Assembly (NCBI RefSeq): GCF_032062105.1
Contig: NW_026939229.1
Span: 1 to 64,000 of the forward strand
Direction of reading: 5' to 3'
Length of the DNA: 64,000 bases
Source of the DNA: Saccostrea cucullata
Lineage: Eukaryota
Part shown: positions 24,027 through 62,700 of the stretch, in pieces
Layout: each line of letters begins with the position of its first letter
How positions within the stretch are numbered: position 1 is the stretch's first letter
The notes under the pieces: generated by a model
What the model saw: the letters and a program-made list of their open reading frames with translations, nothing else
The model's database searches: none
What the model was told of the DNA's origin: nothing
Translations under genes and position numbers: made by a program

Positions 24027-25959
24027 TTATAATTCTTTCCTTTTTTTTCGAATACAAATTTATTGAACATAAAAAAAATCATACAATGTTCTTAGTAAGA
24101 ATAATCATAAGATTTCCAAGGGTTTTAAACAAATTGTGAATGATGGAAATTCTGCTTTAATATAAAGGAAAGCTAACAAAACATAATTTGAGCTGATGTT
24201 TACCCACCATGTCAATCAGATAATATGAGACGGCAAACTGTTTTCAGTTCTCAGCGCTTTTAGTATATAAAATGAACAGATGATGCCTTTTCTAGACATG
24301 AATTAATTGTCCACAATATACTATTTCCCGGAAATATAAATTTCAATGTTTCTTCAATTTTTAGTTTCGAAACAAAAATGGTTTCGCTACCTGATAATTT
24401 CGATCTTCCATCTTCTCTGATGAAACATAATTGCGACTTTCTTTATCGTTAGTATCTGTTAAAAAGATGCTGAGATAATAAATCTGGTCGACCGGTCTTT
24501 TTGCTGACAAATAATGTTTCGATGGCTGAATTAACGCTTTGGAGTATGGACTTGCTGGATGTCTTTTGCCAGTTGAACATGCATGTACTTCGAATGGATG
24601 TCTGTAGCACACTTCTCAATTATCTTTTTTTTCTCTCGAGTATTATAGCGAAGATGTCGAGTGCTCAAAGTGGTTAAGAACCTGTAAATTTACTATATGA
24701 ACTGACAAATGGTGACTATACATGTAATTTCAACCTGATATACATTGTACATGAATTCCAGCAATTTTATTAGTCCTTTTAAGCCCAACAGGCAATTAAC
24801 AGCATGCTAAGTCTTCATAGGATTGTGATAGAAACCTCATAAGACGTAAACGTTTTGGATATGTTTGGACAATTGTTTCTTTAAAGAATAACTTACCAGT
24901 ATTTTTCGATTTCATGATGCGATCAATCGATTGGCTTTCGTGATAATTTTCATAATTAAGGCGTTTATGCATAAAATTATCACGCAAGCCAATCAATTGA
25001 TCATCGTCATGAAATCGAAAAATCTTACAGTTATTCATTATATTTACATACTCTTGATTCCGCCAATCCACGTGCTACAAGCCACGCTTCTGTCTAGCTA
25101 TTTGTCCCACCCTTTTTTAACCGCGCCTATTGATGAAACAGTACAATTGTTCCTATGTAGAAATAAAGTACATTAACTTTTTGTAATTTTATCTCGACAA
25201 TTTTTGTAGATTCTCGTATTCTATAGAATGATCCTTGAGTGTTTAAGCAACATTTCATAAGATTGTCATGCTCCACATATATATCCTGAAATCTGTTGAC
25301 AAGTACTTTGTATCTTTGAGTATTTATCTTTGCTCTCTGAATGAAATTATGTTTCATCATCAAAGAGCAGCAGCGTATGTAGATCTCTAAGTTCCTGTAA
25401 TACGTAAATCCGGAATTTTTTTACCTCGATTTGTTTTTGCAAACCTCGGACAAAATCTGTTGAATAATTTAACCTAACTTTTTACGTGTATAAATATGCG
25501 CAAATATCAACTGGTGTAAATTGGCACTCATACAGGATGCAAATTGTATGTAAATTTACTCCAAGTGCATTTTTCAGCATGTATTGTCATGTGACAGTTA
25601 CTTGTGAGTAAAATAAATAAATTGTTGTGTTTTATCATATCATGTTTTATATTTTTTTTTACTAAACCAAATTTAGTAAGACATATACAGAGCCAATACT
25701 TGCTGCTTATTTAAATAATTTACAAACCATGAGCATATTTCATTCAATACAAGAAGTACATATATTTATGTACAAAACATGAAGCACTGTTTACCAAATT
25801 GAAATCAAAACCACAGAGAGTCTCAGCAGTACAGTATTGTGGTTTTAGAGAAAAGTGTGGCGAAATTAATAATTGTGATCATACTGTTTCAATTGAAAGA
25901 ACGAAAATTGGGATATTTCCATCATATCTTTATCTGCAATATTTATTAACCCCCCTTTA

Positions 25960-27600
25960 AAGATGGTAATAAAATGGATGTATCACTAAGACCAGACTCT
26001 AGGAAAGACTTCCAGAATCGAACGAAGCAGTAGACGGGACACGCCCATTCTGTAATAAACTGTTGCAAAAGAAATCCACGTGTACTCCTCATTAAGATAT
26101 TAACAGTAGTGAAGGAAAAACTTCAAGAGTGCTGTGCAACCATTTATTCAAGAAGTGGTGTGAATCAGATGTGAATACTAAAAAATTCATGAGAACTTTT
26201 CGACAATTTGAAATCACAAGATTTTACCAAAATTAACAGCTTAAAAACTTACGACTTTTCAACTTTATACACAACCATTCCCCACAATAAATTAAAATCC
26301 AGCAGGCGTTTTGATATCGTTGACAGATGCTTTTTCTATAAAATTGGAACTCCTAAATTTACTTACCTGGTCGTTGGTCATTTGCAAAATTATTTTGTTA
26401 AAAAAGAGTTTGATTGCACACACAAGTACTCTGAAGTTGACATCAAGAAGATACTTGAGTTTCTGATTTACAATATCTATGTGGTTTTGGAGACCAGGTC
26501 TTCCAATAATCTATTGGAATTTCCATGGGGACCAAATGCACTCCGTTATTAGCAGACCTATTTTTGTATTCATATAAAGCAGAATTTATGCAAAATTTTA
26601 TGCGTGAAACGAAGAAAACACTTGCTGTGGCCTTCAATCCGACATTTAGATATATCGACGACGTATTGTTAATTAACAATGGTAATTCCATTCAAACGTT
26701 GACACGATATATCCATGAGTGCTTGAGATAAAAGATACCACAAAGTCTGACACATCTCTTTCATACTTGGACATTTACTTTAAAAAGACGTTAATGGTAA
26801 CCTAACAACCAAGTTATACGATAAACGTGACGAATTTAACTTTTCTATCGTCAACTTCCCTTACTTATGCAGCAATATACCTTCATCACCTGCATACGGA
26901 GTGTAAATATCTCAGTTGATTCGATACGCAAGAGCATGTTCTACGTATGAATAATTTCTGAAATGAGGTAACTTATTGACAAGCAAGTCGATGAAACAAG
27001 AATATCAGCAGTCTCGTTTAAAGTCATCATTTCGTAAGTTTTATGGTCGATACAATGACCTTGTCAGCAAATACAATTTATCATTTAGTCATATGCTGAC
27101 TGACGTTTTTTCATACCAATTGTTAGTCCATTATTTATACAATGATTTGACGATAGATTTTTTCCGTTATATTATGATCATGACAATGAGCACACGGCGG
27201 TTGTGATCGGTCAGCAGGGGGTGCTCACTTCTCCATGGCACCTTATCCCACCTCTGATGTTTCGGAGGTCCGTGTTTGCTCTGCTCTTGCTTTTTATTGT
27301 TTTATGGACTTTGAGATTGAATACTGTTCGTTATCTCCTTAACCCACTACTTTTCAATACATGTAAACGTGTTGTTTTGTAAAATTAAAAAAATGAATCA
27401 TACTCCATGATAAACACAATGAAGGAGATATTTTAAACACTTCAAAATGCAAGTCGGTAAACCGTTTAAGCAACCACTTGGCGTGCCCTAATTGCATAAT
27501 CCGGAATTCTATATTTATTTTTAAAAGTGATATGAACACTTAGTTGTTCAAGTGATTCTTTCTTGTTATTAAGTTACCTCAGAAATATTTTGAGAAGTCA
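25960..27600 (-). pseudogene. cGLR paralogue A, old relic split by a Penelope-like element
   Basis: 25960-26084 reads TRGFLLQQ/YYRMGVSRLLL..LESGLS (copy D: TRGSLLQQLYEYYRIGLSCLLL..LEPALS). 27341-27600 aligns at DNA level with 55830-56070 (FRIMQLGHAKW vs FWMMQFGNAKW in copy B). The two halves are contiguous in copy D. Confidence 0.75.
26085..27340 (+). mobile_element. 5'-truncated Penelope-like RT element with no C-terminal endonuclease (Naiad-like), inserted in cGLR relic A
   Basis: KTYDFSTLYTTIPH, MGT..PLLADLFLYSY, FRYIDDVL, LYDKRDEFNFSIVNFPYLCSNIP and RLKSSFRKFYGRY, with stops and frameshifts. Smaller related fragments lie near 32290-32580 and 36050-36230. Confidence 0.85.
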
Positions 27601-36582: not shown

Positions 36583-38619
36583 TTATATATTTCCGTATAA
36601 TTGTCCTTTAACCCATCTTTTTCTAATATTTGTAGCTTCCTGTATTCCATGGTATAGTTCCTGTTTGAGTGACTCTTCAAAGGACTTTAAAGCTTCCTGT
36701 AAATCTCCCACAGCATGTTGACAGATCCCTAGTATCTGCCAGTGTATATCTCGGAGTTCAAAAGGCACATATGTCCCGTCATCATAGAGCAGCAGTGTCT
36801 GTAGGTCTGTCAGTGACTGTAAACACTGAGATCTATTACCCAATCTATATTGAGATAACACAGACAACATCTCTACTATTATAAACGGTGATAAAAATAA
36901 GAACGGAAATCGATTTTGTTGGTTAACACTTTGTTCTAAACTTAATTCTACAATACATGAAATCTTATTATATATTCTCACAGTGTCTACCCAGGCTGTA
37001 TTCATCCTTCTGGACAAAGACAGTTTACCTAGAGCTTCGTTATACCTTAGCCTATCCACTTTATAAAATTCATACATAATAAAGTCCTGTGACATTCTTT
37101 CTTTAGAGAGATAAGTGATATGTAGTGTTTCAACGTATCTCCCAGTCCTGTAGAAATACAGTGCTAAATATAATAAATGAGACAAGGGGCCCAGTTTTGC
37201 TGCAAGTTTCAGCATGTTACAAATCATTCTATCTATGATATATACATTTTTATGTTTGTCAAATAAAGTACTGTTTGCCATTTTGAAGGCTAAATTAACG
37301 AGAGTACTTGCGGTACAGAACTGTAATGTTAATAACTGACTTGATAATCGTGATAGTTTATCAATTGATATCAAATGGAGGTAACAGTCAGATGTCTCTC
37401 TAATAGAAAATGGGAGGCTGAATATCTCACTCCGGCCACACACATCAATATCAGTGATATTCTCAGTAAAAGATAATAAATTGGAAGGGCTACACAGAGC
37501 TGGTTCTAAGATTGATCTGAGAGTCGGACTCAGCAGTAGACTGGACACGTCCATTCTGTAATACTGATAAAGCTGTTGTAAAAGAGATTCACGTGTATCG
37601 CCATTTAGTTTGTTCATAATCATGTTATGTGGAATAAAAAAAATTAGGAAACATTCCACGATAAACGGAAAGAACGAGAAATTTGTAACATTTCCAAAAG
37701 CAATCGAGTAAATTGTTTGGGTGCCATTTAGCGTTTCCGAATTGCATCATCCAGAACATTGTGATCTTCATGTAATATGAACATAGTATTGTCTCTTTTC
37801 GGTAATTCATAACTTCCTTCAGAAATATTTTCAGAAGACCATAACATAGAAATTGTGTATGATTCATGGTACACACTAGTTGGTGTTCGGCTTGAGAAAA
37901 CGATAACCTCCATTCTAATTAGTTATAAGCCGAAACCATTTTACTTCCAACAGGCATACAGTGACATCCATTTCTCAGAATTTTTTCTAACACAGGTACA
38001 GGCGGCCAAGCATGTCTTTGGCATCTTTCCATCAAACTTCTTAAGAATTTTCTGCTGCTAATAGCGGCAAAACAAATAGCATAATCATTTTCAAAAGATT
38101 TAAAAAAAACTATTTGTACAAGGGCCATGAATGGTGAAATTTGTGTGGAAGGAAAAAGACCTGTTATTCCTATAAACACGAAAAACGTTTTCCATGAATA
38201 TATAACTAGATAAGTAAATCCCGCCATTAAAAGCAATAAGACATGGTTTCACAAAAATGGGTTGTTTATGTACGGGTGTCAGAAGACGTAGTCTGACAAA
38301 TCCTGGTGGTGTGTCAGAATCCTCCATAAGAAATACATGATTTTTTTTATGTATTGTTAATTCAGAAATGGGAGATGTCAGTTATTAATTCATAATTACA
38401 ACTCCAGAACATCGTGTCCCTGTCAGATGATCTCAACCTAAATCCATCTCTATAACTGCCACTTCTCATCACAACACTGCCTCTATGATTATTAACAGCT
38501 TTCGTTATCATCTCATCCATGTCCTTTACATCCCTTCTGATGGCCACTTCAGTCGATGTCCCTATTTTACGACACAGACCGACATACAGGACCTCTGATG
38601 GATGGGGAATGGGATCCAT
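36583..38619 (-). pseudogene. cGLR paralogue B, full length but disrupted in its N-terminal half
   Basis: Collinear with 54796-56847 (MDPIPHPSEVLYVGLC..SGSYRDGFRLRSSDRD). Stops at 38362, ~38347 and 37919; frameshifts at ~38341, ~38101 and ~37640. The C-terminal ~1 kb remains open. Confidence 0.9.
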
Positions 38620-41551
38620 TCTTTACAAAAAGACAGGTAAATAAGTTACCTTTTATATTTTTAAGAAATTAATATCAGTAATATGACATTAAAAATCTAT
38701 TCAGGAGTGTACTAGATCTATTAGTTTGGCTATAAACATTAAAAGTTATGATGAAGGTATTTTACAACAGTTAATGAGTTTCACAAATAACGTGTACACA
38801 AAGATGGTATCATTTAAGCAACATGATTTCTTAATACAATCTGCTCAATTATATTATAAACATGAGTTTTTTTATACAGATATTTTATCCAAACAGATTT
38901 ATAATTAACTTAAGTACTTTACCTGACTTTGAATTTTTTCTTCAAATGGCTGTCTGTATCGCAGCAAACTAAAATGGAAATACCCGGCAAATCTACTTAC
39001 GTTTTCTATTAATACATGAAGGCCATCTTTAAAATAAAAAGAGTTTTCCACTTAAGTATAGTAGCTTGGTCCCTTTTTTCGCCCTTATTTTACAGAAAAT
39101 GCTTGAGGATATGGTATAATTTTTATTTTCATGGTGTATAACATAGTATTTCTGATTAAGATTTAGTACAATCATTATTAACGACTTTGAGTATCAAGAA
39201 ACAAAAGCGAATTTGCAACACCTACCGCACATACACATTCCGGAACATTTTCTTTCGAACAGAGTACGGTTTCTCTATTACATACACATGGGCGGAGACA
39301 TTTAAATTAGGCACTATATAAAGGAAGACATGGTGAGCGTTAGCGTGAGATAAGAAAATGTACGGGTTAGAATAATATTCAATAAGCTTGAATTTTATTT
39401 TGCACTATTCGTATTCTTCTTAGTTTGCCGTGTTTGAGGGTTCTTCTTGTAGTTCTTGAGGTATTTTTGGTCTGAAAATCCCCAAAGCACATTTTTTTTA
39501 TTTCTAATCTATAAATGCATTTATCAAATATATTAACCACTATATTAATTTTCTTTCATATGGCAATTTAAAAAGTACAAGCAATCGAATAATAAGTTAC
39601 GGTAAACACACACAGAAATACACTCCCTTTCCTTTGTAAAGGGGAGCTGAGAAAAAATAAACAATAGACCTGAACAGAAGTTTGATAAAGCAAACGAAAA
39701 AGAGTAAATTCTTCCAAACTTGAAAAAAAATGATTATGTAGGAGTGGAAATCAAACTATTTCTCATTTTTATTTGAAAAATAAAACAACAATTTCAATGT
39801 GTTTAGTCATATCGTATCTGCCTGTAGGCGTAAGAACGTTTATAATTTTTTTTTGGGGGGGGGGGGAGGGGGTGAAGAACTAAAGATTTATCTTTGAAAA
39901 GAAGCGGTCACCCCTCCCCCTGATACTACATTTCTGACATGTATATTCATTTCTTAATTTCGCTCTAAATTCCGCAATGAATATTCCGATTTACTTATCG
40001 ATTATTATTTAGAATATACATGGTGTGTACAAATCGCGTAATATACATGTGTATAATCACTTCAAAAACAGTTGTTGGATAATAGAAACATAACAAGGAT
40101 TCTTAATAATAAATATCACAAGATTGGTAAATGAAATTCAAATTTAATATACATTCGAAGTCTTTTCCGAATTTATATGCACCCCTAAACCTGACAAGTG
40201 TATGGTTGCTTTGAATATTGAAATGGTCAGTACAGTGTATTTGTTTTAAATCTTTTTTATAGACTGGCTAAATGTGATGAAATTGTAGCGTCTATGGTAT
40301 TTTTTGCTTGTTTGTTTCTTTTTCGCTAGAAATTGAATAAATATGTATTTATTTAGGTAATACATCTACTCGTACATTATGATATTATACTTTCATGTAA
40401 ATTACTCGAATCTGATTCGTCGAGAAACATTTGATAAAAAACACTACTACCCGTTGAATAATGAAGCCACGCCCTCCTGCGTAGCAACAGTCAACATTGC
40501 TTGACAACGGGTGGCATTCCAAAACATAGCGACTGCGAGGAATTTATGCGCGCACGGCCCACTGTACTTTGTATTTTTATAAAACATTCAGTATAAAATA
40601 ATAAATATTGCATGTAGTTGAGTGTAACATTGAAAATTTTCACCCCTCGAAAACCATTGTCAACCTCGGCTGCGCCTCGGTTGACAATGGTTTTCTTGGG
40701 GTGAAAATTTTCGCAATGCCCAGGAAAATTGCGATTACATGTATGAGAATTAAAATATGTCCATGATAATCATAATTTGAAAAAAACTTTGTTTGTGATA
40801 TTCTTCGAAGTCTATAGAACCTTGTTTTGAATTATAAAAAATAAAAGCTGGTGACTGCACTTTTCAAATACGGGCTACATGTGTCGCTTCCTAGAGAAAA
40901 CACGCTTTCCGGAGGTATTTACCTGTGGCGGTATGGAATCACGTGACATATTATCTATTCTTAGCAGGTCAACAATAGGTTAATCTTATGTAAATGTACT
41001 CACCAAACAGATTCAAAAGCATGATACTTTTTAGTAGAAAACATAGAGCGCAATGTTGTTAACAAAGATATTTTCACACAATCTGTACAAATATGATATA
41101 CATATCATATTTTAATCTCGACTTTGAACAAATCTGCGCTCGATGTTTTTGAAAGCTGAGAAGTAGGTACTTGTCGAAAATTTCTTTTGATATTCATGAA
41201 AATCAAAGGACCCCACCTTCAAAACACAGCTTCGCGTGTTGTCTATTTCAATTATTTGACATTTTTAAACGTTGACGCAAATACTAGAGACATGAGAAAA
41301 TATTATAATTTACTTTTTAAGTTTTTTAATGAAAGATTAAAATTTGAAGAGTAACCCTGGACCCATATAATGCCTTATTGATGAGACTTCTTCTTTACGT
41401 TAGCACTCTCCCTACCGACTGACGTTATCTCTAAACATGTAGATAAAGATGCAGCAATTTAATTTACCCTACTTATAAGATCGGTTTGATTCTTATTTAG
41501 TCAAAAATAATATATATTCATTAATGTTTGCATTTTTTATCTAACTTCAAA

Positions 41552-50934: not shown

Positions 50935-52803
50935 TTAAATATATGCTTGTATATCAATAAAATGTCCATGTAACTGTCTTTTAACCCATCTTTTTCTAAT
51001 ATCTGTAGCTTCCTGTATTCCATGGTAGGGTTCCTGTTAGAGCGACTCTTCGAAAGACTATAAATCCCCGTTTAATTTTCCCAGAACATGCAGACAGATA
51101 CCTAGTATCTGCCAGGATAGGTCTCTTAGTTCTAAAGGGACGCATCTCCCGTCATCATAGAACAGCAGTGTCTTAAGGACTGTCAGTGATTGTGTATATA
51201 AAAATCTATTACTTAGTCAATAGTGAGATAACAAAGACAACCTTCTACCAATAGAAAAGGTGATAAAAGTAAAAAGGGAAATCCATTTTTTTTGGATAAC
51301 ACTTTGTTCTAAACTTAATTCCTCAATACATGAAATATCAGATATTCTAATGCAATTGCATGGATTGCATTAGAATGGGAATAACCGATCTTCTAATATG
51401 GTATTTGCGACCATTAATGCTGGTTTAACGGTCGCAAACATCCGTTTTACCGGCTCCGCTTACGCGTCGCCGGTAAAACTCAGTTTGCGACCGTTAAATC
51501 AGCATTAACGGTCGCAAATACCACATTAGAAGATAGTTATTCCCTAACTCTCACATCCTCTACCCATGCTCCTTTCATCCTTTTAGACAAAGACAGAATA
51601 CCAACAGTATCATTGTATCTCTTTCTATCAATAGTATATTCATACATGTACATAATAAAGGTCTGTGACATTCTTTCTTTAGCTAGATAAGTTATATGTA
51701 TTGTTTCAGCATATCTTCCAGTCCCATAGAAATACAATGCTAAATATAGTGAATGAGACACGGGGCATAACTTTGCTGCAAGTTTTAGCTTGTAACAATC
51801 ATTCTATCTAAGATTAATACATTTTTAGGCGTGCTACATAAAGTATTACTTACCATTCGTAAGGCTAAATTTACGAGAATCCTGGAGGGACAGTATTGTA
51901 ATGTTAACAACTGGAATGCTGATAATGGTAATCGAGATAGTTTATTAATTTGAATCAAGTAGAGATAACAATCATATAGTTTTATAGAACGAAACGCGAG
52001 GATGAATTTCTCTCTGCCGCCACTCAAATCTATGTCTGTAATGTTCTCAGGAAAGGATAACACAAAGGACGGGCTACTAAGGGCTGGTTCTAAGATTGAT
52101 CTGAGAGTCGGACGCAGCAGTAAACAGGACACACCTATTCTGCAATACTGGTAAAGCTATTGTAAGAGAGATTCACGTGTAATTCCCACAACTTTGTTTT
52201 TGAACATGTTTTTTTGGAATAAAAAAGTTTGGAATCACGCCACGATAAACCGAATGAACAAGAAATTTGTAACATTTCCAAAAGCAATCCAGTTAATTGT
52301 TTGGGTGCCATGTAACGTTTTCAAATTGCATTATCCAGAACATTGTTGTCTTTGTTTGATATGAACACAGTACTGGCTCTTGTCTGTAATTTATAACTTC
52401 CTTCAAAAATATTTTCAGAAGACCGTAACATAGAAATTGTGCATGATTCGTGGTACACTAGTTGTTGTTCGGCTTGTGAAAATGACAACCTCCATTCTTA
52501 TTCGTTAGAGATCGATATCATTTTACTTCCAATTGGCACACAGTGGCATCCATTTCTTAGTATTTTTTTCTAACAGAGGTACAGGCGGCCAGCTTTGCCT
52601 CTGGCATCTTTCTACAAAACTACTTAGGAATTTTTCTGCAACAAATAGTGGCTAAACAAAAAGCATAATCATTTTCAATAGAATAAAAATAGCTATTTGT
52701 ACAAGGACCATGAATGGTGCAATTCGTGTTTAGGCTGCTGTACCTGAAAATGATAAAAGATATCCCTCCATGAAGAACTACATATATAAACCCCGCTATA
52801 AAG
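50935..52803 (-). pseudogene. cGLR paralogue C, 5'-deleted and disrupted
   Basis: Fragments TIHGPCTNSYFYSIENDYAFC, LRSILEPALSSPSF and LYLALYFYGTGRYAET match copy D. It has multiple stops and frameshifts, a 203-bp insertion at 51345-51547, and lacks the GS/DxD catalytic region. Its 3' flank (50590-50935) resembles 54480-54795. Confidence 0.9.
51345..51547. mobile_element. Double-hairpin foldback insertion in cGLR copy C
   Basis: Absent from copies B and D. Short hairpin 51345-51375 plus a ~168-bp palindrome 51377-51544. No clear TSD. Confidence 0.8.
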
Positions 52804-53860: not shown

Positions 53861-54795
53861 TTCTTATATGTTTTCAACATCAAGAAAATCAATATATGAA
53901 TGAGTAGCAGTACATGTAAATGCTTACATGTGAAGGTCTGTTATTTTACAACAATAACCAAGACGTTAGGTCTATTTAATTTCATTGTAAACAAAATTTG
54001 ATTTTTCTTGCATGCAGGCTTTACAATTTGTTCTTATTTTTTCCCCCTTTTTTGTTTGAGGAAGGTAACGAATCAGACGAAGTTTGTCGAAAGATCTCGG
54101 CCAGTCCAATTTTACGGAGATGACCGAGTGACAGCCGTGGTAGGGCTAATACAGAATCAAGAATACGGCCTGATGAGTGTAGTTCAGCTTAATTACTGTT
54201 TTAGGTTTTTACTAAAGCCGGTTAGCTTTTTTTTATAAGTTCTACTTGTCTGATAATTTTTAATGACGTTCGCGATTTATTTGAGAATAATGTCCGCGTC
54301 ATTTCTCTGATCTGGGCAATAATTGTGGTAGAATTACCAAATTTTCACAGTTTAATTCCAATCGACTTTTAAAAATTCCTAAACGTATACAGACTTACGT
54401 ATATTTACCAATATATCACAAACTTTCGTGTTAACTTCGTACTTCATTTTTTTAAACCCTTTTTATCCTAATTGAAATGGAATTTTGACTTTTTTGCTTC
54501 AATATTTTTTTATTACGATGTCAAGGTAGTCAGAAGAATGTGATAAAACTTACGTTGACATTTGAAAATGAACACAGAATAATATTCCACAACAAAATAA
54601 AGTTAGAAATGAAATCAACATACAGGCATGTTCAACATACAATAGCATAAAAATAAGCTCATTTTAGCGTATATAATCATAAGCAGCTTTCCAGCAAAAT
54701 ATGTTAAAAAGATGATTTAAATTAGATATGTTTAGAATTGTTTAACAGACCAAAGTACCTCTTGTCACTTTTTCAGACCAGTATGATGAACATTT

Positions 54796-56847
54796 TTAAT
54801 TAAATATTTGTATATTTCTGTGTAACTGTCCTTTAACCCATCTTTTTCTAATATCTGTAGCTTCCTGTATTTCATGGAATGATTCCTCTTTGAGCGACTT
54901 TTCAAATGACTCTAAAGCCCCGTGTAAGTCTCCTACAACATGTTGACAGATTCCTAGTATCTGCCAGGATATGTCTCTGGTGTATAAAGGAACATATCTC
55001 CCATCGTCATAGAGCAGCAGTGTCTGTAGGTCTGACAGTGACTGTAAACACTGGGATCTATTACCTAGTCTATAGTGACATAACACAGACAACATTTCAT
55101 CCAAAAAATAAGGTGATAAAAGGAAGAATGCATATCCATTTTGTTGGATAACACTTTGTTCTAAACTTAATTCCTCAATACATGAAATATCAGATACATG
55201 CACATTGTTAACCCAGGCTATCTTCATTCTTCGAGACAAAGACAGATTGCCTACAGCGTTAATATACCTCTGACTATTAACAGTATATTCATACATAATA
55301 AAGTCCTGTGACATTCTTTCTTTAGCGATATGAGTGATTTGTAGTGTTTCAGCATATCTCCCAGTCCTATAGTAATACAATGCTAAAAATAATAAATGAG
55401 ACACGGGACCTAACTTTGCTGCAAATTTCAACACGTTACAAATCATTCTATCTAAGATATATACATTTCTATGTGTGCTACATAAAGTACTATTTGCCAT
55501 TCTGAAGGGTAAATAAACGAGAATATTGGCGGTACAGAACTGTAATGTTAATAATTGACTTGGTGAGATTGATAGCAATAATAGTTTATCAATTAGAATG
55601 AAGTAGAGATAACAATCATATATATTTTTTGTTTCATATAAGTTCCTGAATATCTCATTCTGTCCACAGAAATCTATATCTGTTATGTTCTCAGTAAAGG
55701 ATAACACAAAGGACGGGCTACTGAGGGCTGGTTCTAGGATTGATCTGAGAGTCGGACTCAGCAGTAGACAGGACAAGCCTATTCTGTAATACTCATAAAG
55801 TTGTTGTAAGAGAGATCCACGTGTAACACCAACTACTTTGTTTATGAACATGTTGTTTTGTGGAATAAAAAAATTGGGAAACACTCCACGATAAACAGAA
55901 TGAACAAGAAATTTGTAGCATTTCCAAAAGCATTTCAGTAAATTGTTTGGGTGCCATCTAACGTTTACCGATTGCATTATCCAGAACGTTGTAGTCTTCA
56001 TGTAATATGAACACAAAATTGCCTCTTTTTGGTAGTTTATAACTTCCTTCAGAAATATTTTCAAAAGTCCGTAACATAAAAATTGTGTATGATTCATTGA
56101 ACAAACTAGTTGTTGTTCGGCTTGAGAAAACGACAACCTCCATTCTAATTCGTTAGAAGTTGATACCATTTTACTACCAATAGGCACACAGTGGCATTCA
56201 TTTCTACGTATTTTTTCTAACACAGGTGCAGGCGGCCAGGTATATCTCTTGCATCTTTCCTTAAAACCTCTCAAGAATTTTCTGCAAAAAATAGTGGCAA
56301 AACAAAAAGCAGAATCAAGTTCAATAGATTTAAAATAGTAATTTGTACAAGGGCCATGAATGGTAAAATTCATCTTTGGATGAGAGTACTTGTTGGTCGT
56401 ATGATAATGAAAAACAGCATCTCTTGATAAAGAACTAGATATATAAACACCGTTTTTGAAGGCAACGGAACATGATTGCATGAAACTTGATTGTGCATGC
56501 ATTGATGTCAAAAGACGAAGTCTGACAAATCCTGGTGGTGTGTCAGAATCCTCCATTAGTATTATATGATGTTGTGAGTTATTATAAATCCGGAAATGGG
56601 AGATGTCAGTTATCAATTTATAATAACACAACCAGAACATAATGTCCCTGTCAGATGAACTCATCCTAAATCCCTCTCTAAAACTACCACTATCCATAAA
56701 TGCAATTCTTCTGTGATTATCAACACGTTTCTCTATCATCTCCTCCATGTCCATCACGTCCCTTCTGATGGCCACTTCTGTCGGTGTCCCTATCTCATCA
56801 CACAGACCAACATACAGAACCTCTGATAGACGGGGAATGTGGTCCAT
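54796..56847 (-). CDS. cGAS-like receptor (cGLR): Mab-21 nucleotidyltransferase with C-terminal TPR-like helical region, ~683 aa, single coding exon (copy D, intact)
   Basis: NTase motif SGSFREGFRMSSSDRDIM (GS..DxD) and a third acidic residue in IELDSAF. Mab-21 motifs HCVPIG..EWRLSFSQAEQQL, SYYMKTTTFW and FPNFFIPQNNMF. TPR-like LFLALYYYRTGRYAETL and SWQILGICQHVVGDLHGALESFEKSL. The ATG at 56847 directly follows a pyrimidine tract and AG acceptor, so the 11 extra N-terminal residues in the ORF track are probably intronic. Confidence 0.9.
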   Translation of the reverse strand: MDHIPRLSEVLYVGLCDEIGTPTEVAIRRDVMDMEEMIEKRVDNHRRIAFMDSGSFREGFRMSSSDRDIMFWLCYYKLITDISHFRIYNNSQHHIILMEDSDTPPGFVRLRLLTSMHAQSSFMQSCSVAFKNGVYISSSLSRDAVFHYHTTNKYSHPKMNFTIHGPCTNYYFKSIELDSAFCFATIFCRKFLRGFKERCKRYTWPPAPVLEKIRRNECHCVPIGSKMVSTSNELEWRLSFSQAEQQLVCSMNHTQFLCYGLLKIFLKEVINYQKEAILCSYYMKTTTFWIMQSVNVRWHPNNLLKCFWKCYKFLVHSVYRGVFPNFFIPQNNMFINKVVGVTRGSLLQQLYEYYRIGLSCLLLSPTLRSILEPALSSPSFVLSFTENITDIDFCGQNEIFRNLYETKNIYDCYLYFILIDKLLLLSISPSQLLTLQFCTANILVYLPFRMANSTLCSTHRNVYILDRMICNVLKFAAKLGPVSHLLFLALYYYRTGRYAETLQITHIAKERMSQDFIMYEYTVNSQRYINAVGNLSLSRRMKIAWVNNVHVSDISCIEELSLEQSVIQQNGYAFFLLSPYFLDEMLSVLCHYRLGNRSQCLQSLSDLQTLLLYDDGRYVPLYTRDISWQILGICQHVVGDLHGALESFEKSLKEESFHEIQEATDIRKRWVKGQLHRNIQIFN

Positions 56848-57050
56848 TCTGTATAAAAAGACAGGTAAAAATGTTATCATCCATGTTTAAAAAAAAATAA
56901 TACATCAGCAATATGACATTTTATATAAAAATGTATTCAAGAGAAAATGTACTACATTGTATATCTATTAGTTTATTATAGACATTAAATGATTTGATGA
57001 GTGTTTTTTTACAGATTAATTTCACAAAAAATAAAAAAAAAACTGTTTAA

Positions 57051-57765
57051 GGATTCGTCAAAGGTCAACATGTTCAAAAAAGCATTTTTACAATAGCCCC
57101 TAAACTACGTGAGGTATAAAGTTAAAACTTTTACAGTTTATAAATTTTTCATTGCTTAATAGATAAAAGTATCACTTGATAAAAAGAAATACTTGGAAAA
57201 AATATTAAATGAGAAAAAATTTTTTTAAATGCATATATTTTTAAAAATACACCTAATTATTTACGTGCTCTTAGTGAAAAGCATCATTGCAGAAACAAAA
57301 TATGTTTATCACTGAAGGGCAAGTTGGACTTGGATTGCCTATGGAAAGTTGTTTTCCTAGTTTATTTTGTCCAAATGTTAAGACTTGAAAGTGAAAGTAC
57401 ATTGCAAATGGCAGATTCTAAAGGGGTCTTGTCTTTATACATGTCATGCTTTCAATAACAGCCTTTCAGAGACCATTCAAGTTCAACTTGACCTTCGAAT
57501 GATAAACATATATTATTTCTGCAATTATGGGTTTCACAAAAAGGACAGAATTAAGCTGGTGCACTTTTCTTTAAATATGTCCATTTTCTGATACAATTTT
57601 TCTTAAAAAAAAAAATCTTTTTTAAAATATATGTTATCAAGTGATACAATATATCTATTAATCAATGATTAGTTATAAACTGTAAACGTTTTGACCGTAT
57701 ACCACACATAGGTTTGGAGCTAGTGTAAAAATAATCTTTTAGACATGTTGACCTTTGACGAAACT
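57051..57765. mobile_element. Non-autonomous Kolobok-type element 5' of the cGLR D coding exon
   Basis: TIR ..TTCGTCAAAGGTCAACATGT extending imperfectly ~150 bp, with TTAA at 57047 and 57766. Absent from the paralogous region upstream of copy B. Confidence 0.8.
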
Positions 57766-57980
57766 TTAAAATGCTTCACTCAAACGACTTAATGCGGTTT
57801 GTAGATACCGGTATATCATTATTATGTGATTAATGTTACATGTTTATCAATTTACACCCCAATTTTTAATACAATCTGCTCATTTATATTCTTTATACAC
57901 TTTAAAAACATGGATTTCATTATAAAGATATTTTAACCCAAACATATTTAAGAACTGCCCGTCTTGTAGACAACTATGCA

Positions 57981-58011
57981 GGAAATTCCCGAGAATCTTC
58001 TTTCGTTTTCT
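57981..58011 (-). promoter_or_regulatory. Candidate NF-kB site plus IRF/ISRE-type site upstream of the intact cGLR
   Basis: Minus strand GGGAATTTCC (57990-57981) and AGAAAACGAAAG (58011-58000, GAAANNGAAA). A homologous block lies at 38976-39007 upstream of copy B. Confidence 0.5.
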
Positions 58012-59399
58012 ATTTAAACCCTCGTTAAAAAAAAGTTAGCACTCTCCTGATCGAATGATTAAAATGGTCCGATTCAGGGCTTTTTTGAACAAATATGTGA
58101 TTTATTTCATATATTGATTTTTATATTTCAGGAATAGATTATTTCAGTTCAATTATCGTAATTAATTTAAGCTTTTCAACATTTATTTAGTCCACATGAA
58201 ATTATCAAATTAAAATTGCCTTTATTTATAGATGAATGATATCAAAGTTATCATTTAAACCCCTGTTTGTTTTTATGTATATCTTTAGTTAATTGCAGTC
58301 GTAAAACTAGCATAGCAGGGATTATGGACAGTGGTCAGGTGGTTTACTTTGGAATATTTTTAAGTTCATCTAAGATTGATACAGACATAATGTTGAAGGA
58401 TTTTATTACAATTGGAAGAACAAAAAAGCTGTTCTTTTATTTAAAATTTTAGGTGGATGATATGAAAATTTTGGGTTTATAAAATCAGCCATCGGTTAAC
58501 AACGTCATTAAATAAAGAGATTTGCAGATTTTTTAAACCAGAAATGGATTTCCATTCCCTTATACTCCGTGCTTTGCAAAACTCAATAATAATTGGAAAC
58601 TTACCCAAAGAAAAGTGTTACTGTTGAAGGAATTTTAAATTTGAATTTCTTCCTATGTATTTGCTATTTTGTTGCAAAATAATTTCCTTAATTGTGTTTT
58701 CTAAATTCGTTTTTCTTCCTTAACTTTTTTTTCTGCACACATCATATTAAAACTTGATTTCACTTTACATTATGTTGTTTTTTTTAAATGATTTCCGATT
58801 TTGTTAAATTAACATTGTAACTGTCGTCCGGAAATATAATACTGGTCTAGTACAATGTGATTATACGACGATTTGTGGTTGGAAATGACTTTTATTCAAT
58901 GTTTGAAACACACAAGGAGTTGGCTATCATATCAAACTTCAAATCCTAAGAAAATTTGTTTTATACCATGTTTAATTCTTCAGAACCAAATCTTTTTACG
59001 ATGTTTTTATTTTTTGGACTCCACTTTTATTTCACTTCATGACATTAAAGCAAAAACCATTTTGACCTCACAACTGCACTTAAATGTGGGATATGAAAAA
59101 ATCCAATTAGTCATAAGCACGGGATAAAGAGTTAAACATAGGATAGTTCTGATTACCAGACGTCTACAGGTAAAGTGTTAGACTGCAAGAACAAAGACAC
59201 ACAATGCAGTATTCTTAAGATGAATGATATCACAGAGGTCATGTAAATCCCTGTCCTTTTCTGTTTATATCTTGTGTAGTGTCAGGGCCCACCTGGATTT
59301 CACTTGTTGGTTAGTTTCCCTCTCTTTTGGTTTTACCTGGTTATTTACTTTTTTGTTTAAGATTTTGGAATGAGCAGAAATATTGGCTTCTTCATATAA

Positions 59400-59796
59400 G
59401 AATTTTTTTTTAAATCTTCTTCTCAAGAATGACAAAACCATAATTCATCATATTTATATGGAAGTATGCTCAGATAGTATAGTTTCAAGTTTGTTCAAAT
59501 CATGACCCCCGGGGGAAGGGCGGGGCCAAAATGGTCGACCAAAATTTTACATAGAAATATATAGAAAAATTCTTTAAAAATCTTCTTCTCAAGAATGACA
59601 AAGCCTAAGTCATCATATTTATATTGAACCATGCTCAGGTTGTGTAGATTCAAATTTGTTCAAATCATGACCCCCGAGTAGGGCGGGGCCAAAATGGCTG
59701 ACCAAAGTTTTACATAGAAATATATAGGAAAATTCTTTTCTACTTTTTCCTAGCCTTAGTGCTCAGGTAAGCAATGTGACCCATGGTCCTCTTGTT
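59400..59796 (-). mobile_element. Partial pearl/CvA-like HINE (5' end plus ~2 cores)
   Basis: Reverse complement of the 8678 element start (..TGTGACCCATGGTCCTCTTGTT) and two related core units. Confidence 0.7.
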
Positions 59797-62700
59797 TTAA
59801 CATCTTGTCATGTTCTCATCTCGTCAGCTGATTTTTTAAATTTTTAACGCCTTTAATTTCAATGGAGAATGTGTTGCAGATACTCGTGAAACTATTCCCC
59901 TTATACAGAAGGGCATTTACCTGTAGATATCCACGACTTTTAAAGACGCGTAATCTCTAAAAGGAAAATATAGATACAGTAAATGCATCTGACTCTAGTT
60001 AGAAGATGGGCTTGAGTCTTATTTAAAAAAGCCAACTAACATTTTACATTTCATTTATGTTTGATTTTAAGGAAGCTGTAAACTCTAACAGAAACTGTTT
60101 TTTCTTTCGGACTCAAAGAAAAATATATCATATAAAGATATGTATATTGAGACTTTTCATTCATTTAGAACACGGGGCACGTGCATTATTTGCGCAGGAG
60201 AAATGTTAAAAAAAACATTTGACTATTTGTCAGCAGAAATCACAGTTGTTTACTTACATTGGAAAAATTAATGAAAATAATTATTTAAATTTCTTACTCT
60301 TGGTCTTTTATATTGCTAAAAATATATTTATCTATTATAAATTATGTAATGAACGGTAAATAACAATTTCTTTAATCTTACATCTAAGGGCTGATTATTT
60401 TATCCTCATAAACTATGCAATAAATAGAGCTCTTTAGTGTGCAGTGTTTACAGCGTCCTCAATCGAACATTAAACCACTCAGTGAGTATGGCGTGTAAAG
60501 TGTTAATTTAAAGTTGCGATGATACTTCCTTTGAAATCTCTACATGTATTAATCAGTATATACATGTGGTTGTTTATTTTCTTTTTAAACAAGTTTATTT
60601 CCCAGACCTTATCTAAAACAACATATCAAATAACATTAATAGAAGATAAATAAGGCAGCAGCCAGGGTTGGGGCCCTGACTAGGCTCCTTCTAAACAATG
60701 ATAATTATGTCCTATGACATCACGCAAGATGTTTTAAGGACGTTTGATCCTGATATTTTGAGCGTATTTCGCGCAGGTCCTTTATTCATAAAATTAAGCA
60801 TCATTTTTAGGTTCTAACAATAAAACTGAATTCTACAATGCAAATTAAACTATATTCAATGAAAAAACCGCGATTAAATGCCATTCAAGTAGAATTAAGG
60901 TAGGGACTATATTTTGTGGCGGAAGGTTTTTTTAGACGAAAATAATCAGTTTTTTTTACATTGGAACTATAACAGTACTGTAAATTTGGGATGCCTATTT
61001 TTCCATGCTGGTTGCACACAAAGCTGTTTTTTGCAGTGAAATATGTTATGCTGGTTCTGAAACATCTATTAAATTATTTCTTATGAATTCTATCAACAAA
61101 GTGTGACAAATATAGCAAATGTATTCTGAAAATCCGGGAAAAAATTGAGCCAATTTAAACGTAAAATTCACACTTTTTTAATTAGTTATATCTGAAAATG
61201 TCCATCATATACCCCCACTTTTGATGTTTTTTTCTAAATATTCAAGATAACTTTGACCTATTTGCTTAAAATCAGAAAAAGTTTAAGACTTTAAAATAAT
61301 TTTCTTGCTTAATATATTTTCAATGCCGGAAAAATAACATTTTATTAGTGCAGAAAGGTCAAATAATTGATTATGCCAAGCAATTTGAAACTTTTTCTTA
61401 GTCACAATTTTTGAGTGTCTTTTTTTAAACAGACTTAGAGTTCATTTAGTTTCATGCTTTAATCGGATAAAAAAAAGATAAAATTATTGGAGGGAAAACG
61501 TCGAAGATGTAATTTTTAATTAAGACACAAATTTCAGTGCAGAAAGGTCATATTAAATGTACTGTAGCGCTAAAAGAAGCTACAGTAAAGAAAAAAAGAC
61601 CCCCATTTTTTGAGTTGAATTTTAATTAAGCCATGTTTGTAGAAACTAGAAATATACTTGGCAAAAAAGTTTAAGACTTTAAATATCAGGATCGAACGTC
61701 GTTAAATTATATAGAAAAAAAATAAAAGTATAATTATTGTCAAAAAATATATTTATACAGTATACATCATGAATCAAGGTGAAGATTATAATTTTAGTGC
61801 AGATGTCAACCGAGGGAGCCACAAATACGTTTCACAGTCTATTTACTCCCCTCTTTTTGACAGCACTAATGGAAGAGAGGTCTCGTCCCAGTAGTATTTA
61901 TACAAGAATATATAATTTTCACATTAGTTTGGAAAGATTTTCAAAAATCCTAAATTCAGTGTTAATATAAAGAAAGCGTACAACAGAAGTATAGAAACAA
62001 ATTGATTTTTTAACATAATTGTATATATTGTATTCAGTTTTACTTAAAGACTCCAATCTACACAGCATTTTATGTTTAATTCTATATGCCACGTACGTTA
62101 TAAGGAAATTTAGAGATCTAGTTTTATTATTTATTTTTAATTGAAAAACCCAACTACAATATGTTTTCAATGTGTTAATCCTATGTATTAATCAGAATAT
62201 AGTAACCAAACTTCATGTAACTGAGTTTATATACGTGGGTAAGGGATTGATGCAGATTTGTTCAAACGAAGAGTTGTCTTCTTTCAGGAAATAAAATTAG
62301 AAATTAGTTTTTTTTTTCGCAAGGACAACATGGCCAAAATAGATGAAACTTATATATATTTTTTTGCATTAGTGTAGGTTCTTCAAAGTTTTTCCCGGGT
62401 ATAATTTAATGGACCAAGGAAGAAAGGAATGGGCGTAAATTAAGTATTGAGTCAATGTTCATTGACATATACAACAAGAGAACTAGACATTTTGGTCATT
62501 TTCAGCAAAACCATATATATCTAAATGTTGAAAAATCGAGTTTCAACCGAGACTTTAACTCAGAGCCTCGATCTGGCTTATTGTGGCAACAACACTCTGA
62601 CAAATAAATTGAACTTTTGAGACCCAATATATTGACTGACCTTAAAGCTGAATACGATTCGCAAAAGGAATGTGTCAACCAGTTATGTTAACTTAGTCCT

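What the first reader, a model, noticed from the sequence alone, without database searches (positions are those of the whole stretch)
54796..56847. Intact cGAS-like receptor with a TPR-like C-terminal extension
Seen: a 683-aa ORF with a complete GS..DxD..D nucleotidyltransferase signature, a Mab-21 helical lobe and ~300 further helical residues with TPR-like motifs. Established: cGLRs are nucleic-acid-sensing enzymes that make cyclic dinucleotides for STING, and bivalves have expanded families of them. Inference: this is an active sensor whose TPR-like tail may provide ligand recognition or autoinhibition in place of the vertebrate cGAS zinc thumb, which I do not see here. Ligand and product cannot be read from sequence.
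Basis: partly seen in the sequence, partly recalled or inferred. Interest (0 to 1): 0.75.

Follow-up and report, generated by a model that had tools for sequence, protein, structure and literature searches.

The report
Intact oyster cGAS-like gene with TPR tail
This is one intact copy of a very large oyster gene family that joins a cGAS-type immune-signalling enzyme to a helical repeat tail; the family is already known in outline, and this copy showed no clear sign of being switched on.

Summary
Residues ~17-380 are a complete cGAS-type nucleotidyltransferase: Pfam Mab-21 and Mab-21_C pass their cut-offs, and the model matches mouse cGAS at Z 27. G65-S66, D77xD79 and D189 are kept in 85-87 of 87 family members. 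Residues ~381-694 form a TPR-like helical solenoid. The gene is one of at least 64 scored paralogues in this Saccostrea-type oyster genome. The family reaches other oysters and a pearl oyster, and evolves under purifying selection (dN/dS ~0.36). Li et al. 2023 already report the bivalve cGLR radiation and TPR-bearing cGLRs, and this scan met the same family on other DNA of this genome (s1-703790). "Active sensor" is not shown: three poly-A RNA runs give only trace, patchy reads, no public protein model matches this ORF, and the literal published motif pattern matches 0 of 87 members. The tail's role stays an inference. Verdict: an ordinary new member of a known but biochemically uncharacterised kind.

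The parts
54796..56847 (-). Most likely coding sequence, 683 aa plus stop, in a single coding exon
   Evidence: ORF list; the family consensus starts at this Met; exact public models of paralogous loci are 678-700 aa where full-length
56848..56880 (-). In-frame upstream extension (11 codons) that is probably the intron end and splice acceptor (ttttacctgtctttttatacag|a), not coding
   Evidence: Sequence; AG within 4 nt of the ATG in 30 of 30 copies; model pLDDT <50 for residues 1-10
55741..56832 (-). cGAS-type nucleotidyltransferase core, residues ~17-380 (NTase lobe plus Mab-21_C helical lobe)
   Evidence: VIA-align Z 27.2, rmsd 3.0 A, 303 aligned residues, model 21-376 on mouse cGAS 149-505; Cv-cGLR1 Z 25.8; MB21D2 Z 25.0; Pfam PF03281 and PF20266
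56683..56688 (-). G65-S66 of the NTase activation loop
   Evidence: Each kept in 85 of 87 family members; lies between strand 59-64 and helix 66-69 in the model
56644..56652 (-). D77-R78-D79, the first two catalytic acids
   Evidence: D77 in 87 of 87 and D79 in 86 of 87; on strand 77-84; lined up with mouse cGAS 'EFDVMF' in a sub-alignment that is not significant on its own
56314..56316 (-). D189, the third catalytic acid
   Evidence: 85 of 87; the profile alignment puts it on the D of human cGAS 'sVDitl' and of the 8gjy chain's 'sVDltl'
54799..55740 (-). TPR-like alpha-solenoid tail, residues ~381-694
   Evidence: All-helical in both models; VIA-align top rows are almost all TPR or TPR-like proteins at Z 8.6-10.2; best Foldseek E 0.02; no Pfam family over its cut-off
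54886..54966 (-). The one recognisable TPR motif, residues 639-665
   Evidence: TPR_2 E 0.005 in this copy; 51 of 72 members hit TPR_2 and 18 of 72 hit TPR_1 at E<=0.01; this stretch matches 13 repeats of a 1702-aa TPR protein
36586..38649 (-). Broken paralogue in the same array (three frame changes)
   Evidence: tblastn pieces in frames -2, -1, -3, -2 at 49-76% identity
50968..52745 (-). More degraded paralogue in the same array
   Evidence: tblastn pieces at 45-84% identity in three frames

Best explanation
The ORF is an intact paralogue of a large subfamily of cGAS-like receptors, found in oysters and a pearl oyster, in which a complete cGAS-type nucleotidyltransferase core is fused to a ~315-residue TPR-like helical solenoid. 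Shown here: the fold, the conserved catalytic and nucleotide-pocket residues, purifying selection on both domains, the array and family context, and STING ligand-binding-domain exons in the same genome. Inferred: the protein rests inactive, is switched on by a ligand, uses D77/D79/D189 with two metal ions to join NTPs into a cyclic di- or oligonucleotide, and that signal is read by one of the genome's STING proteins. Also inferred: the tail packs on the core and acts as a regulatory or recognition module. Its C-terminal TPR part (about residues 592-661) is conserved, as expected for a fixed contact. Residues ~392-421 of the tail and ~32-61 of the core (the C-terminal end of the long N-terminal helix and the strand before the GS loop) evolve fastest, as expected for surfaces that differ between paralogues. 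This copy may be silent, or expressed only under conditions not sampled.
For: Core fold and family: Pfam Mab-21 and Mab-21_C over their cut-offs. Family profile against PDB sequences: 8gjy 'cGAS-like receptor 1' 1.1e-19, cGAS ~1e-17, MB21D2 2.9e-11, MAB21L1 9.8e-6. Structure: Z 27.2 to mouse cGAS across the whole catalytic domain; Foldseek E ~1e-10.

Catalysis: G65/S66/D77/D79/D189 are kept in 85-87 of 87 members. W247, R248, S250, C290, S291, Y292, K295 and T296 are invariant in 72 sequences and align with cGAS 'WRLSFS' and 'SSYHVKT'. The same motifs are kept in a Pinctada homologue at 29% identity over 673 columns.

Selection: dN/dS is 0.36 overall, 0.32 in the core and 0.43 in the tail, among 27 intact paralogues. 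It is ~0.42 on this copy's own branch. This copy departs from only 4 of 148 near-invariant columns, against a family median of 6.

Partner: 12 STING_LBD exon matches over Pfam's cut-off, on 9 contigs.

Tail-core coupling: tail residues sit mostly above pLDDT 90 in the full-length model (pTM 0.90), against a mean of 71 when the tail is folded alone with a thinner alignment.

Charge: the core pI of this copy is 9.03, within the >8.5 range that Li et al. report for nucleic-acid-sensing cGLRs (passages).
Against: No transcription of this copy was seen. Depth is <=1.24 per bin and patchy in ~45% of each of three poly-A RNA runs. 91-95% of all laid reads run on into unlike sequence, and no joint appears at the acceptor. 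No public protein model matches it. The literal cGLR motif pattern quoted by Li et al. matches 0 of 87 members: the residue before GS was S in 68 of the 78 members where my motif regex located it, and the spacing to the third acid is 101-139 rather than 50-90. The GS/DxD alignment to cGAS is not significant at sequence level on its own. No window of 30 codons reaches dN/dS >1. The two folding runs used alignments of different depth (72 and 27 sequences), so the pLDDT contrast is weak evidence for packing. No enzyme product, ligand or STING pairing can be read from sequence.
Confidence: 0.8

Rival explanations
1. This particular copy is a silent relic: an ORF that is still open but no longer (or never) transcribed, awaiting decay in a birth-and-death array.
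For: Only trace, patchy reads in three poly-A RNA runs. No public protein model, although 14 of the 31 other paralogous loci examined contain exact public models. Two broken copies lie in the same window. Of the 64 scored places, 30 show one or more stops inside the match. The crude branch omega of 0.42 is higher than the neighbour's 0.27.
Against: The frame is open over 694 codons. Only 4 of 148 near-invariant columns are changed, and 55 of 71 relatives have at least as many changes. All catalytic residues are intact. The splice acceptor is intact. Omega is well under 1. The tissue and condition of the RNA runs are unknown to me, and immune genes are often inducible.
Confidence: 0.3
2. The family is a catalytically silent Mab-21 scaffold (like MAB21L1 or MID49/51, as I recall them), with the TPR tail doing the work as an adaptor.
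For: The literal published active-site pattern is not matched. The Pfam Mab-21 NTase match covers only the second half of the profile. MB21D2 and MAB21L1 are also hit.
Against: The three acids and the GS are kept in 85-87 of 87 members, and in Pinctada at 29% identity. That is hard to explain without catalysis. Pocket motifs shared with cGAS are invariant. The lowest dN/dS (0.10-0.2) lies over residues 242-371, which hold those motifs.
Confidence: 0.05
3. It is an active nucleotidyltransferase whose output is not a STING-directed cyclic dinucleotide, for example a linear 2'-5' oligomer as in OAS, or another receptor's ligand.
For: The product cannot be read from sequence. There are ~18 more residues between the second and third acid than the ~91 I recall for human cGAS. 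Li et al. report cGLR products that match no known nucleotide (legend passage).
Against: The closest solved relatives are all cGAS or cGLR enzymes rather than OAS. STING ligand-binding domains are present at several loci.
Confidence: 0.1

Closest known systems
cGAS-like receptors (cGLRs) as defined by Li et al. 2023 (bioRxiv 10.1101/2023.02.22.529553; passages read), including their category of cGLRs with appended TPR modules and the >200-gene radiations in Crassostrea virginica and Dreissena polymorpha
   Same: The same two-lobed caged NTase fold, GS/DxD/D active site, lack of a zinc thumb, extreme bivalve copy number and a TPR-type appendage. RefSeq names some core-only relatives (45-47% identity) 'cyclic GMP-AMP synthase-like receptor'.
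   Different: Their quoted motif pattern, taken literally, matches 0 of 87 members. The passages I read mention no TPR-bearing cGLR with a product or a ligand.
Oyster dsDNA-sensing cGLRs: Cv-cGLR1 (PDB 8gjw) and the 8gjy chain named 'cGAS-like receptor 1'
   Same: Same fold (8gjw: Z 25.8, 317 aligned residues). 8gjy is the best profile hit among solved structures, at 1.1e-19.
   Different: Only 18-19% identity. The Cv-cGLR1 catalytic domain lies at residues 288-633 of its own chain numbering, so any extension there is N-terminal, not a C-terminal TPR tail.
Vertebrate cGAS
   Same: The whole catalytic domain superposes: rmsd 3.0 A over 303 residues. 'WRLSFS' and 'SY.xKT' pocket motifs are shared.
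   Different: No zinc-thumb insertion. 107 rather than ~89 residues (recalled for human cGAS) lie between the second and third acid motif. It has a C-terminal TPR-like tail rather than, as I recall for cGAS, a basic N-terminal tail.
CgcGAS of Crassostrea gigas (Qiao et al. 2021, PMC8218723; passages read)
   Same: An oyster Mab-21 protein placed in the cGAS/STING axis.
   Different: CgcGAS is 590 aa with a Mab-21 domain and three zinc-finger domains. That is a different architecture.
TPR sensor and adaptor domains (Rap/PlcR/AimR receptors, Sti1/Hop, KLC, LGN)
   Same: The best structural matches of the tail: Z 9.0-10.2, 120-206 aligned residues.
   Different: All are tied within 1 Z and fall under the tool's caution level of ~13 for helical repeats. 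Sequence identity is 7-14%. No specific family stands out.

Membership tests
cGLR (criteria quoted in Li et al. 2023) | Catalytic GS loop and three acidic residues present and at positions homologous to cGAS | tested here: met
   G65, S66, D77, D79 and D189 are kept in 85-87 of 87 members. D189 aligns with the Asp of cGAS 'VDIT'. GS and DxD sit on the expected loop and strand.
cGLR (criteria quoted in Li et al. 2023) | The literal pattern h[QT]GS[X8-20][DE]h[DE]h[X50-90]h[DE]h | tested here: not met
   0 of 87 members match. The residue before GS was S in 68, T in 7, V in 2 and M in 1 of the 78 members where my motif regex located it. The spacing from the second to the third acid is 101-139. 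I read this as a descriptive pattern that is too narrow, not as loss of the site.
cGLR (criteria quoted in Li et al. 2023) | Homology across both the NTase core and the C-terminal helix bundle | tested here: met
   PF03281 25.6 bits and PF20266 39.8 bits, both over the 24.1 cut-off. All 72 of 72 members hit both.
cGLR (criteria quoted in Li et al. 2023) | Predicted structure directly homologous to known cGLR or CD-NTase enzymes | tested here: met
   Model pLDDT 92. Z 27.2 to cGAS, 25.8 to Cv-cGLR1 and 25.0 to MB21D2.
cGLR (functional definition) | Ligand-activated synthesis of a nucleotide second messenger read by STING | not testable with these tools
   Only the presence of STING_LBD exons in the genome was shown.
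Vertebrate-type cGAS | Zinc-thumb insertion between the NTase and helical lobes | tested here: not met
   The query has gaps of 9 and 3 residues at the place where I recall the thumb to lie. The family consensus there is 'AEQKLVYSMNHTQFLCYG', with no added loop.
TPR repeat proteins | Pfam TPR profile over its curated cut-off | tested here: not met
   In this copy TPR_2 scores 17.3 bits against a cut-off of 27. In the family, 51 of 72 members hit at E<=0.01, best 6.6e-8.
TPR repeat proteins | Right-handed solenoid of paired antiparallel helices, similar to solved TPR domains | tested here: inconclusive
   The top 50 VIA-align rows are almost all TPR or TPR-like, but at Z 8.6-10.2, under the tool's caution level for helical repeats. 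The tail-only model has pLDDT 71. Foldseek gives no match at E<=0.001.
Expressed, functional gene (this copy) | Transcript evidence | tested here: not met
   Depth <=1.24 per bin, patchy, and no joint at the acceptor in three poly-A RNA runs read to ~45% each. Tissue and condition are unknown to me.

The most novel reading that the evidence does not exclude
The TPR-like tail, not the basic groove of the NTase core, is the ligand-sensing module. It clamps the core in an off state and releases it on binding a peptide or protein ligand rather than a nucleic acid, much as TPR sensor domains gate other immune and quorum-sensing receptors. The hundreds of paralogues would then be a repertoire of protein-pattern sensors feeding STING, a mode of cGLR activation that the papers I read do not describe.
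Probability: 0.12. Interest if true: 0.75.

Novelty: new member of a known kind. Interest (0 to 1): 0.3.

Why it matters
cGLRs with appended repeat domains are listed in the one large survey, but in the passages I could read they have no product, ligand or mechanism. This family is very large and conserved across oysters and a pearl oyster. It folds with high predicted confidence as a single unit. That makes it a convenient place to ask what an appended TPR module does to a cGAS-type enzyme. This locus by itself adds little: it is one of many copies and shows no clear transcription. A practical point for annotators is that an intact 683-aa family member appears to have no public protein model.

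Tried and rejected
Stand-alone tail proteins. The tail profile found many ~350-aa proteins with the match starting at residue 28. Nine of the 12 I inspected begin 'MF' at the family's invariant M344, and the other three start nearby. I read them as truncated ORF calls from broken or partial copies, like the window's own ORF 36583-37659, and not as a separate family.

Retrocopy or transposon-borne gene. Rejected. The coding exon is intronless, but a splice acceptor just before the ATG is kept in 30 of 30 copies. The copies sit in tandem arrays and differ by 27-49% in protein sequence.

A specific link between the tail and Rap/PlcR/AimR peptide receptors. Not supported. They top the VIA list at Z ~10 but are tied with generic TPR domains.

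Positive selection. No 30-codon window has dN/dS >1. The maxima are 0.81 at 392-421 and 0.76 at 32-61.

Tail relatives outside Mab-21 proteins. The ESM Atlas returned only unnamed mollusc clusters of 158-243 aa.

Geometry of the active site and of the tail-core interface. Not possible, because model coordinates are not exposed to scripts.

The journal version of Li et al. (PMC10527820) is not held, and supplements are closed. I therefore could not check whether family members are in their Tables S1 and S2.

Literature. Searches found no paper other than Li et al. that mentions TPR-bearing cGLRs. That covers only the held library and those search terms.

The high word depths of run X2 on some gene bins come from contigs of 49-102 letters (table 8). 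I did not count them as expression.

The 'stops_inside' column overstates decay. L002, L003 and L007 are listed with stops, yet they hold ORFs of 689-706 aa that contain exact public models. The stops there probably lie at the natural ends.
Full report
WHAT IS THERE. On the minus strand, 54796..56880 is an uninterrupted 694-codon frame from the first ATG. I think that start is the true one, for three reasons. The 22 bases before it read ttttacctgtctttttatacag, then a, then ATG, which is a typical acceptor. In 30 of 30 copies examined from this genome an AG lies within 4 nt of the ATG, although the rest of the upstream sequence has diverged. The family consensus starts MDHIPRLSE. The gene therefore has a single coding exon, probably preceded by a 5'-UTR intron. 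I number residues in the 694-aa frame throughout; subtract 11 for the 683-aa protein.

THE CORE. Pfam gives Mab-21_C (E 5.1e-10, residues 269-347) and the Mab-21 nucleotidyltransferase domain (E 1.4e-5, 25.6 bits against a cut-off of 24.1, second half of the profile only). The protein alone hits mouse and human cGAS at about 2e-10 over residues 213-366. A profile of 72 family members hits the 8gjy chain named 'cGAS-like receptor 1' at 1.1e-19, cGAS at about 1e-17, MB21D2 at 2.9e-11 and MAB21L1 at 9.8e-6.

An AlphaFold2 model built on that alignment has mean pLDDT 92 and pTM 0.90. Foldseek puts cGAS structures first (E ~1e-10), with Cv-cGLR1 at 6.1e-10. VIA-align gives Z 27.2, rmsd 3.0 A and 303 aligned residues, with model 21-376 on mouse cGAS 149-505. 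Cv-cGLR1 follows at Z 25.8 and human MB21D2 at Z 25.0. Residues ~17-380 are thus a whole cGAS-type catalytic domain.

THE ACTIVE SITE. The candidate residues are G65-S66 ('MDSGSFREGF'), D77-x-D79 ('SSDRDIMF') and D189 ('IELDSAF'). In 87 full-length family members they are kept in 85, 85, 87, 86 and 85 sequences. The profile alignment places D189 on the Asp of human cGAS 'sVDitl' and of the 8gjy chain's 'sVDltl'. I recall that Asp, from no call, as D319, the third catalytic acid.

GS and DxD line up with mouse cGAS 'TGS...EFDVMF' only in a sub-alignment that is not significant by itself. They do sit on the expected loop and strand of the model (strand 59-64, GS, helix 66-69, strand 77-84).

The motifs 'WRLSFS' and 'CSY.xKT' are invariant at W247, R248, S250, C290, S291, Y292, K295 and T296. 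They align with cGAS 'WRLSFS' and 'SSYHVKT'. From memory, these hold nucleotide-contacting residues of cGAS.

A pearl-oyster (Pinctada imbricata) protein of 683 aa, which UniRef calls 'Cyclic GMP-AMP synthase', aligns end to end at 29% identity (E 4e-80). It keeps all of these motifs and the tail.

Against this, the pattern quoted by Li et al., h[QT]GS[X8-20][DE]h[DE]h[X50-90]h[DE]h, matches 0 of 87 members when applied literally. The residue before GS is mostly S, and the gap to the third acid is 101-139 residues. I take this to mean that the printed pattern is narrower than the family, not that the site is lost.

NO ZINC THUMB. In the alignment with mouse cGAS the query has gaps of 9 and 3 residues between 'WRLSFS' and the following helix, where I recall the cGAS thumb to lie.

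THE TAIL. Residues 371-694 hold 16 helices and a few short strands. In this copy the only repeat signal is TPR_2 at 639-665 (E 0.005, 17.3 bits, below the cut-off of 27). Across the family, 51 of 72 members hit TPR_2 and 18 of 72 hit TPR_1 at E<=0.01. The same stretch of the tail profile matches 13 repeats of an unrelated 1702-aa trypsin-nSTAND1-TPR protein.

A tail-only model, built from 27 sequences of this genome, has the same helices but pLDDT 71 and pTM 0.73. Foldseek finds nothing at E<=0.001 for it; the best match is a SusD-like protein at 0.02, followed by KLC, LGN, MamA and designed TPRs. VIA-align against 48,161 chains returns almost only TPR or TPR-like proteins at Z 8.6-10.2 (Rap, PlcR, AimR, Sti1/Hop, KLC, LGN, APC subunits). 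All are tied and fall below the tool's caution level of about 13 for helical repeats.

'TPR-like solenoid' is therefore a fair description, and no specific family can be named. Outside Mab-21-bearing clusters, the ESM Atlas shows only unnamed mollusc fragments.

The tail is modelled much more confidently within the full-length protein than alone. This hints that it packs on the core, but the two runs used alignments of different depth, and I could not inspect coordinates.

FAMILY CONTEXT. Searching the window's own 1.17-Gb genome with the protein gave 2040 first-look candidates. The 64 that were scored all have E <= 2.8e-200 and 51-73% identity, apart from the self-match. Of these, 34 have no stop inside the match, and 29 of those 34 cover nearly the whole query. 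That stop column overstates decay (see Tried and rejected).

In the window itself there is one intact copy (this one). There is also a copy broken by three frame changes at 36586-38649, a more degraded one at 50968-52745, and two small fragments. The next copy, just beyond the window at 65473-67548, is 73% identical and intact at 685 aa.

Outside this genome, 972 proteins match at E<=0.001. The best 120 come from Saccostrea, Ostrea and Crassostrea/Magallana or from unnamed sources, and none of their source names describes a function. The tail profile finds 600 clusters of 50% identity at E<=0.001, and 118 at 1e-30. Core-only searching brings up shorter RefSeq models named 'cyclic GMP-AMP synthase-like receptor 1/2' at 45-47% identity.

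SELECTION. Among 27 intact paralogues of this genome, the median pairwise dN/dS is 0.36 overall. It is 0.32 in the core, 0.43 in the tail and 0.51 for residues 381-470. In 30-codon windows the minimum is 0.10-0.2, over residues 242-371. The maxima are 0.81 at 392-421 and 0.76 at 32-61, and no window exceeds 1.

On this copy's own branch a crude parsimony estimate gives 0.42, against 0.27 for its neighbour. This copy departs from 4 of 148 near-invariant columns (Q95H, W199C, W206F, G228E). The family median is 6, and 55 of 71 relatives have at least as many changes. Both domains are under constraint, and this copy shows no decay.

EXPRESSION. I found three raw-read oligo-dT RNA-seq runs with the same species label, and one metatranscriptomic run. 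I laid them on 54200-60100 at 97% likeness. About 45% of each raw run was read.

Over the gene body the depth per 197-base bin never exceeds 1.24, and it is zero in many bins. Of all laid reads, 91-95% run on into unlike sequence, and no joint is reported at the predicted acceptor. The only strong signal is a repeat at 59322-59912. The metatranscriptome contributes only pieces of 49-102 letters.

Transcription of this copy is therefore not shown. I do not know the tissue or condition of those runs, so this is not proof of silence.

No protein in the 15-billion collection is 90% or more identical to this ORF, and none of the 370 proteins fetched is contained in it. By contrast, 14 of the 31 other paralogous loci examined contain exact public models.

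PARTNER. STING ligand-binding-domain exons occur at 12 places on 9 contigs, all over Pfam's cut-off. This fits the multiple STING genes reported for oysters. It shows that a receptor is available, not that it pairs with this enzyme.

CHARGE. The core of this copy has pI 9.03 and the tail 6.33. Across 72 members the core pI ranges from 5.58 to 9.12, with 20 of 72 above 8.5. Li et al. associate pI >8.5 with nucleic-acid-sensing cGLRs. By that rule this copy could bind nucleic acid, and many of its relatives would not.

WHAT IS KNOWN. In the bioRxiv version of Li et al. 2023 (passages read) I found four relevant points. They list 3,020 cGLRs. They report more than 200 in C. virginica and D. polymorpha. 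They state that 87% are lone enzymes, and that some carry tetratricopeptide or ankyrin modules (their Fig. 1C and Table S2). The passages name no TPR-bearing enzyme with a product. Their limitations section says that many cGLRs were inactive in vitro, probably for want of unknown ligands.

CgcGAS of C. gigas is a different architecture, Mab-21 plus three zinc fingers in 590 aa. Four literature searches gave no other paper on TPR-bearing cGLRs in the held library. This scan has already met the same family elsewhere in this genome (s1-703790), and my results agree with that note.

VERDICT. It is unproven about activity, and speculative about the tail. The locus is an ordinary member of a very large family that has been catalogued in outline but not characterised biochemically.

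Noticed in passing
window 36586-38649 (minus): A paralogue of the same family, broken by three frame changes. Its tail half survives as the 358-aa ORF 36583-37659.
   Followed up: partly
window 50968-52745 (minus); small fragments at 25242-25400 and 27365-27466: A more degraded paralogue, plus two small family fragments on the same strand. The window is part of an old tandem array with birth-and-death turnover.
   Followed up: partly
codons 12-61 and 592-691 of the family alignment (window ~56698-56847 and ~54808-55107): Among 27 paralogues, pooled dS falls to ~0.40-0.63 at both ends of the coding sequence, against ~1.0 in the middle. This could be gene conversion at the gene ends or constraint on synonymous sites. 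It is unexplained.
   Followed up: no
window 59322-59912: A repeat with RNA depth of about 3-19 per strand class in three runs, many 'goes back' and 'skips' joints and many loose ends. It looks like a dispersed, transcribed repeat and is unrelated to the gene.
   Followed up: no
window 11176-12024 (plus): A 282-aa ORF with a weak GIY-YIG match (E 6.7e-4, 20.3 bits, under the 22.6 cut-off). It is probably a mobile-element remnant.
   Followed up: partly
window 20389-20871 (minus): A 160-aa ORF or exon with a CD80-like C2-set immunoglobulin domain (E 1.8e-8).
   Followed up: partly
database proteins P0121, P0122, P0123, P0126 and others: A recurrent class of ~350-aa 'tail-only' protein models, including one RefSeq model. 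Nine of the 12 inspected start at the family's invariant M344. They are probably truncated calls from broken copies.
   Followed up: yes
window 54796-56847 compared with L002 (G000:C21366:65473-67548): The neighbouring copy contains an exact public protein model (P0001, 685 aa), but this intact ORF has none. This may be a gap in the annotation.
   Followed up: partly
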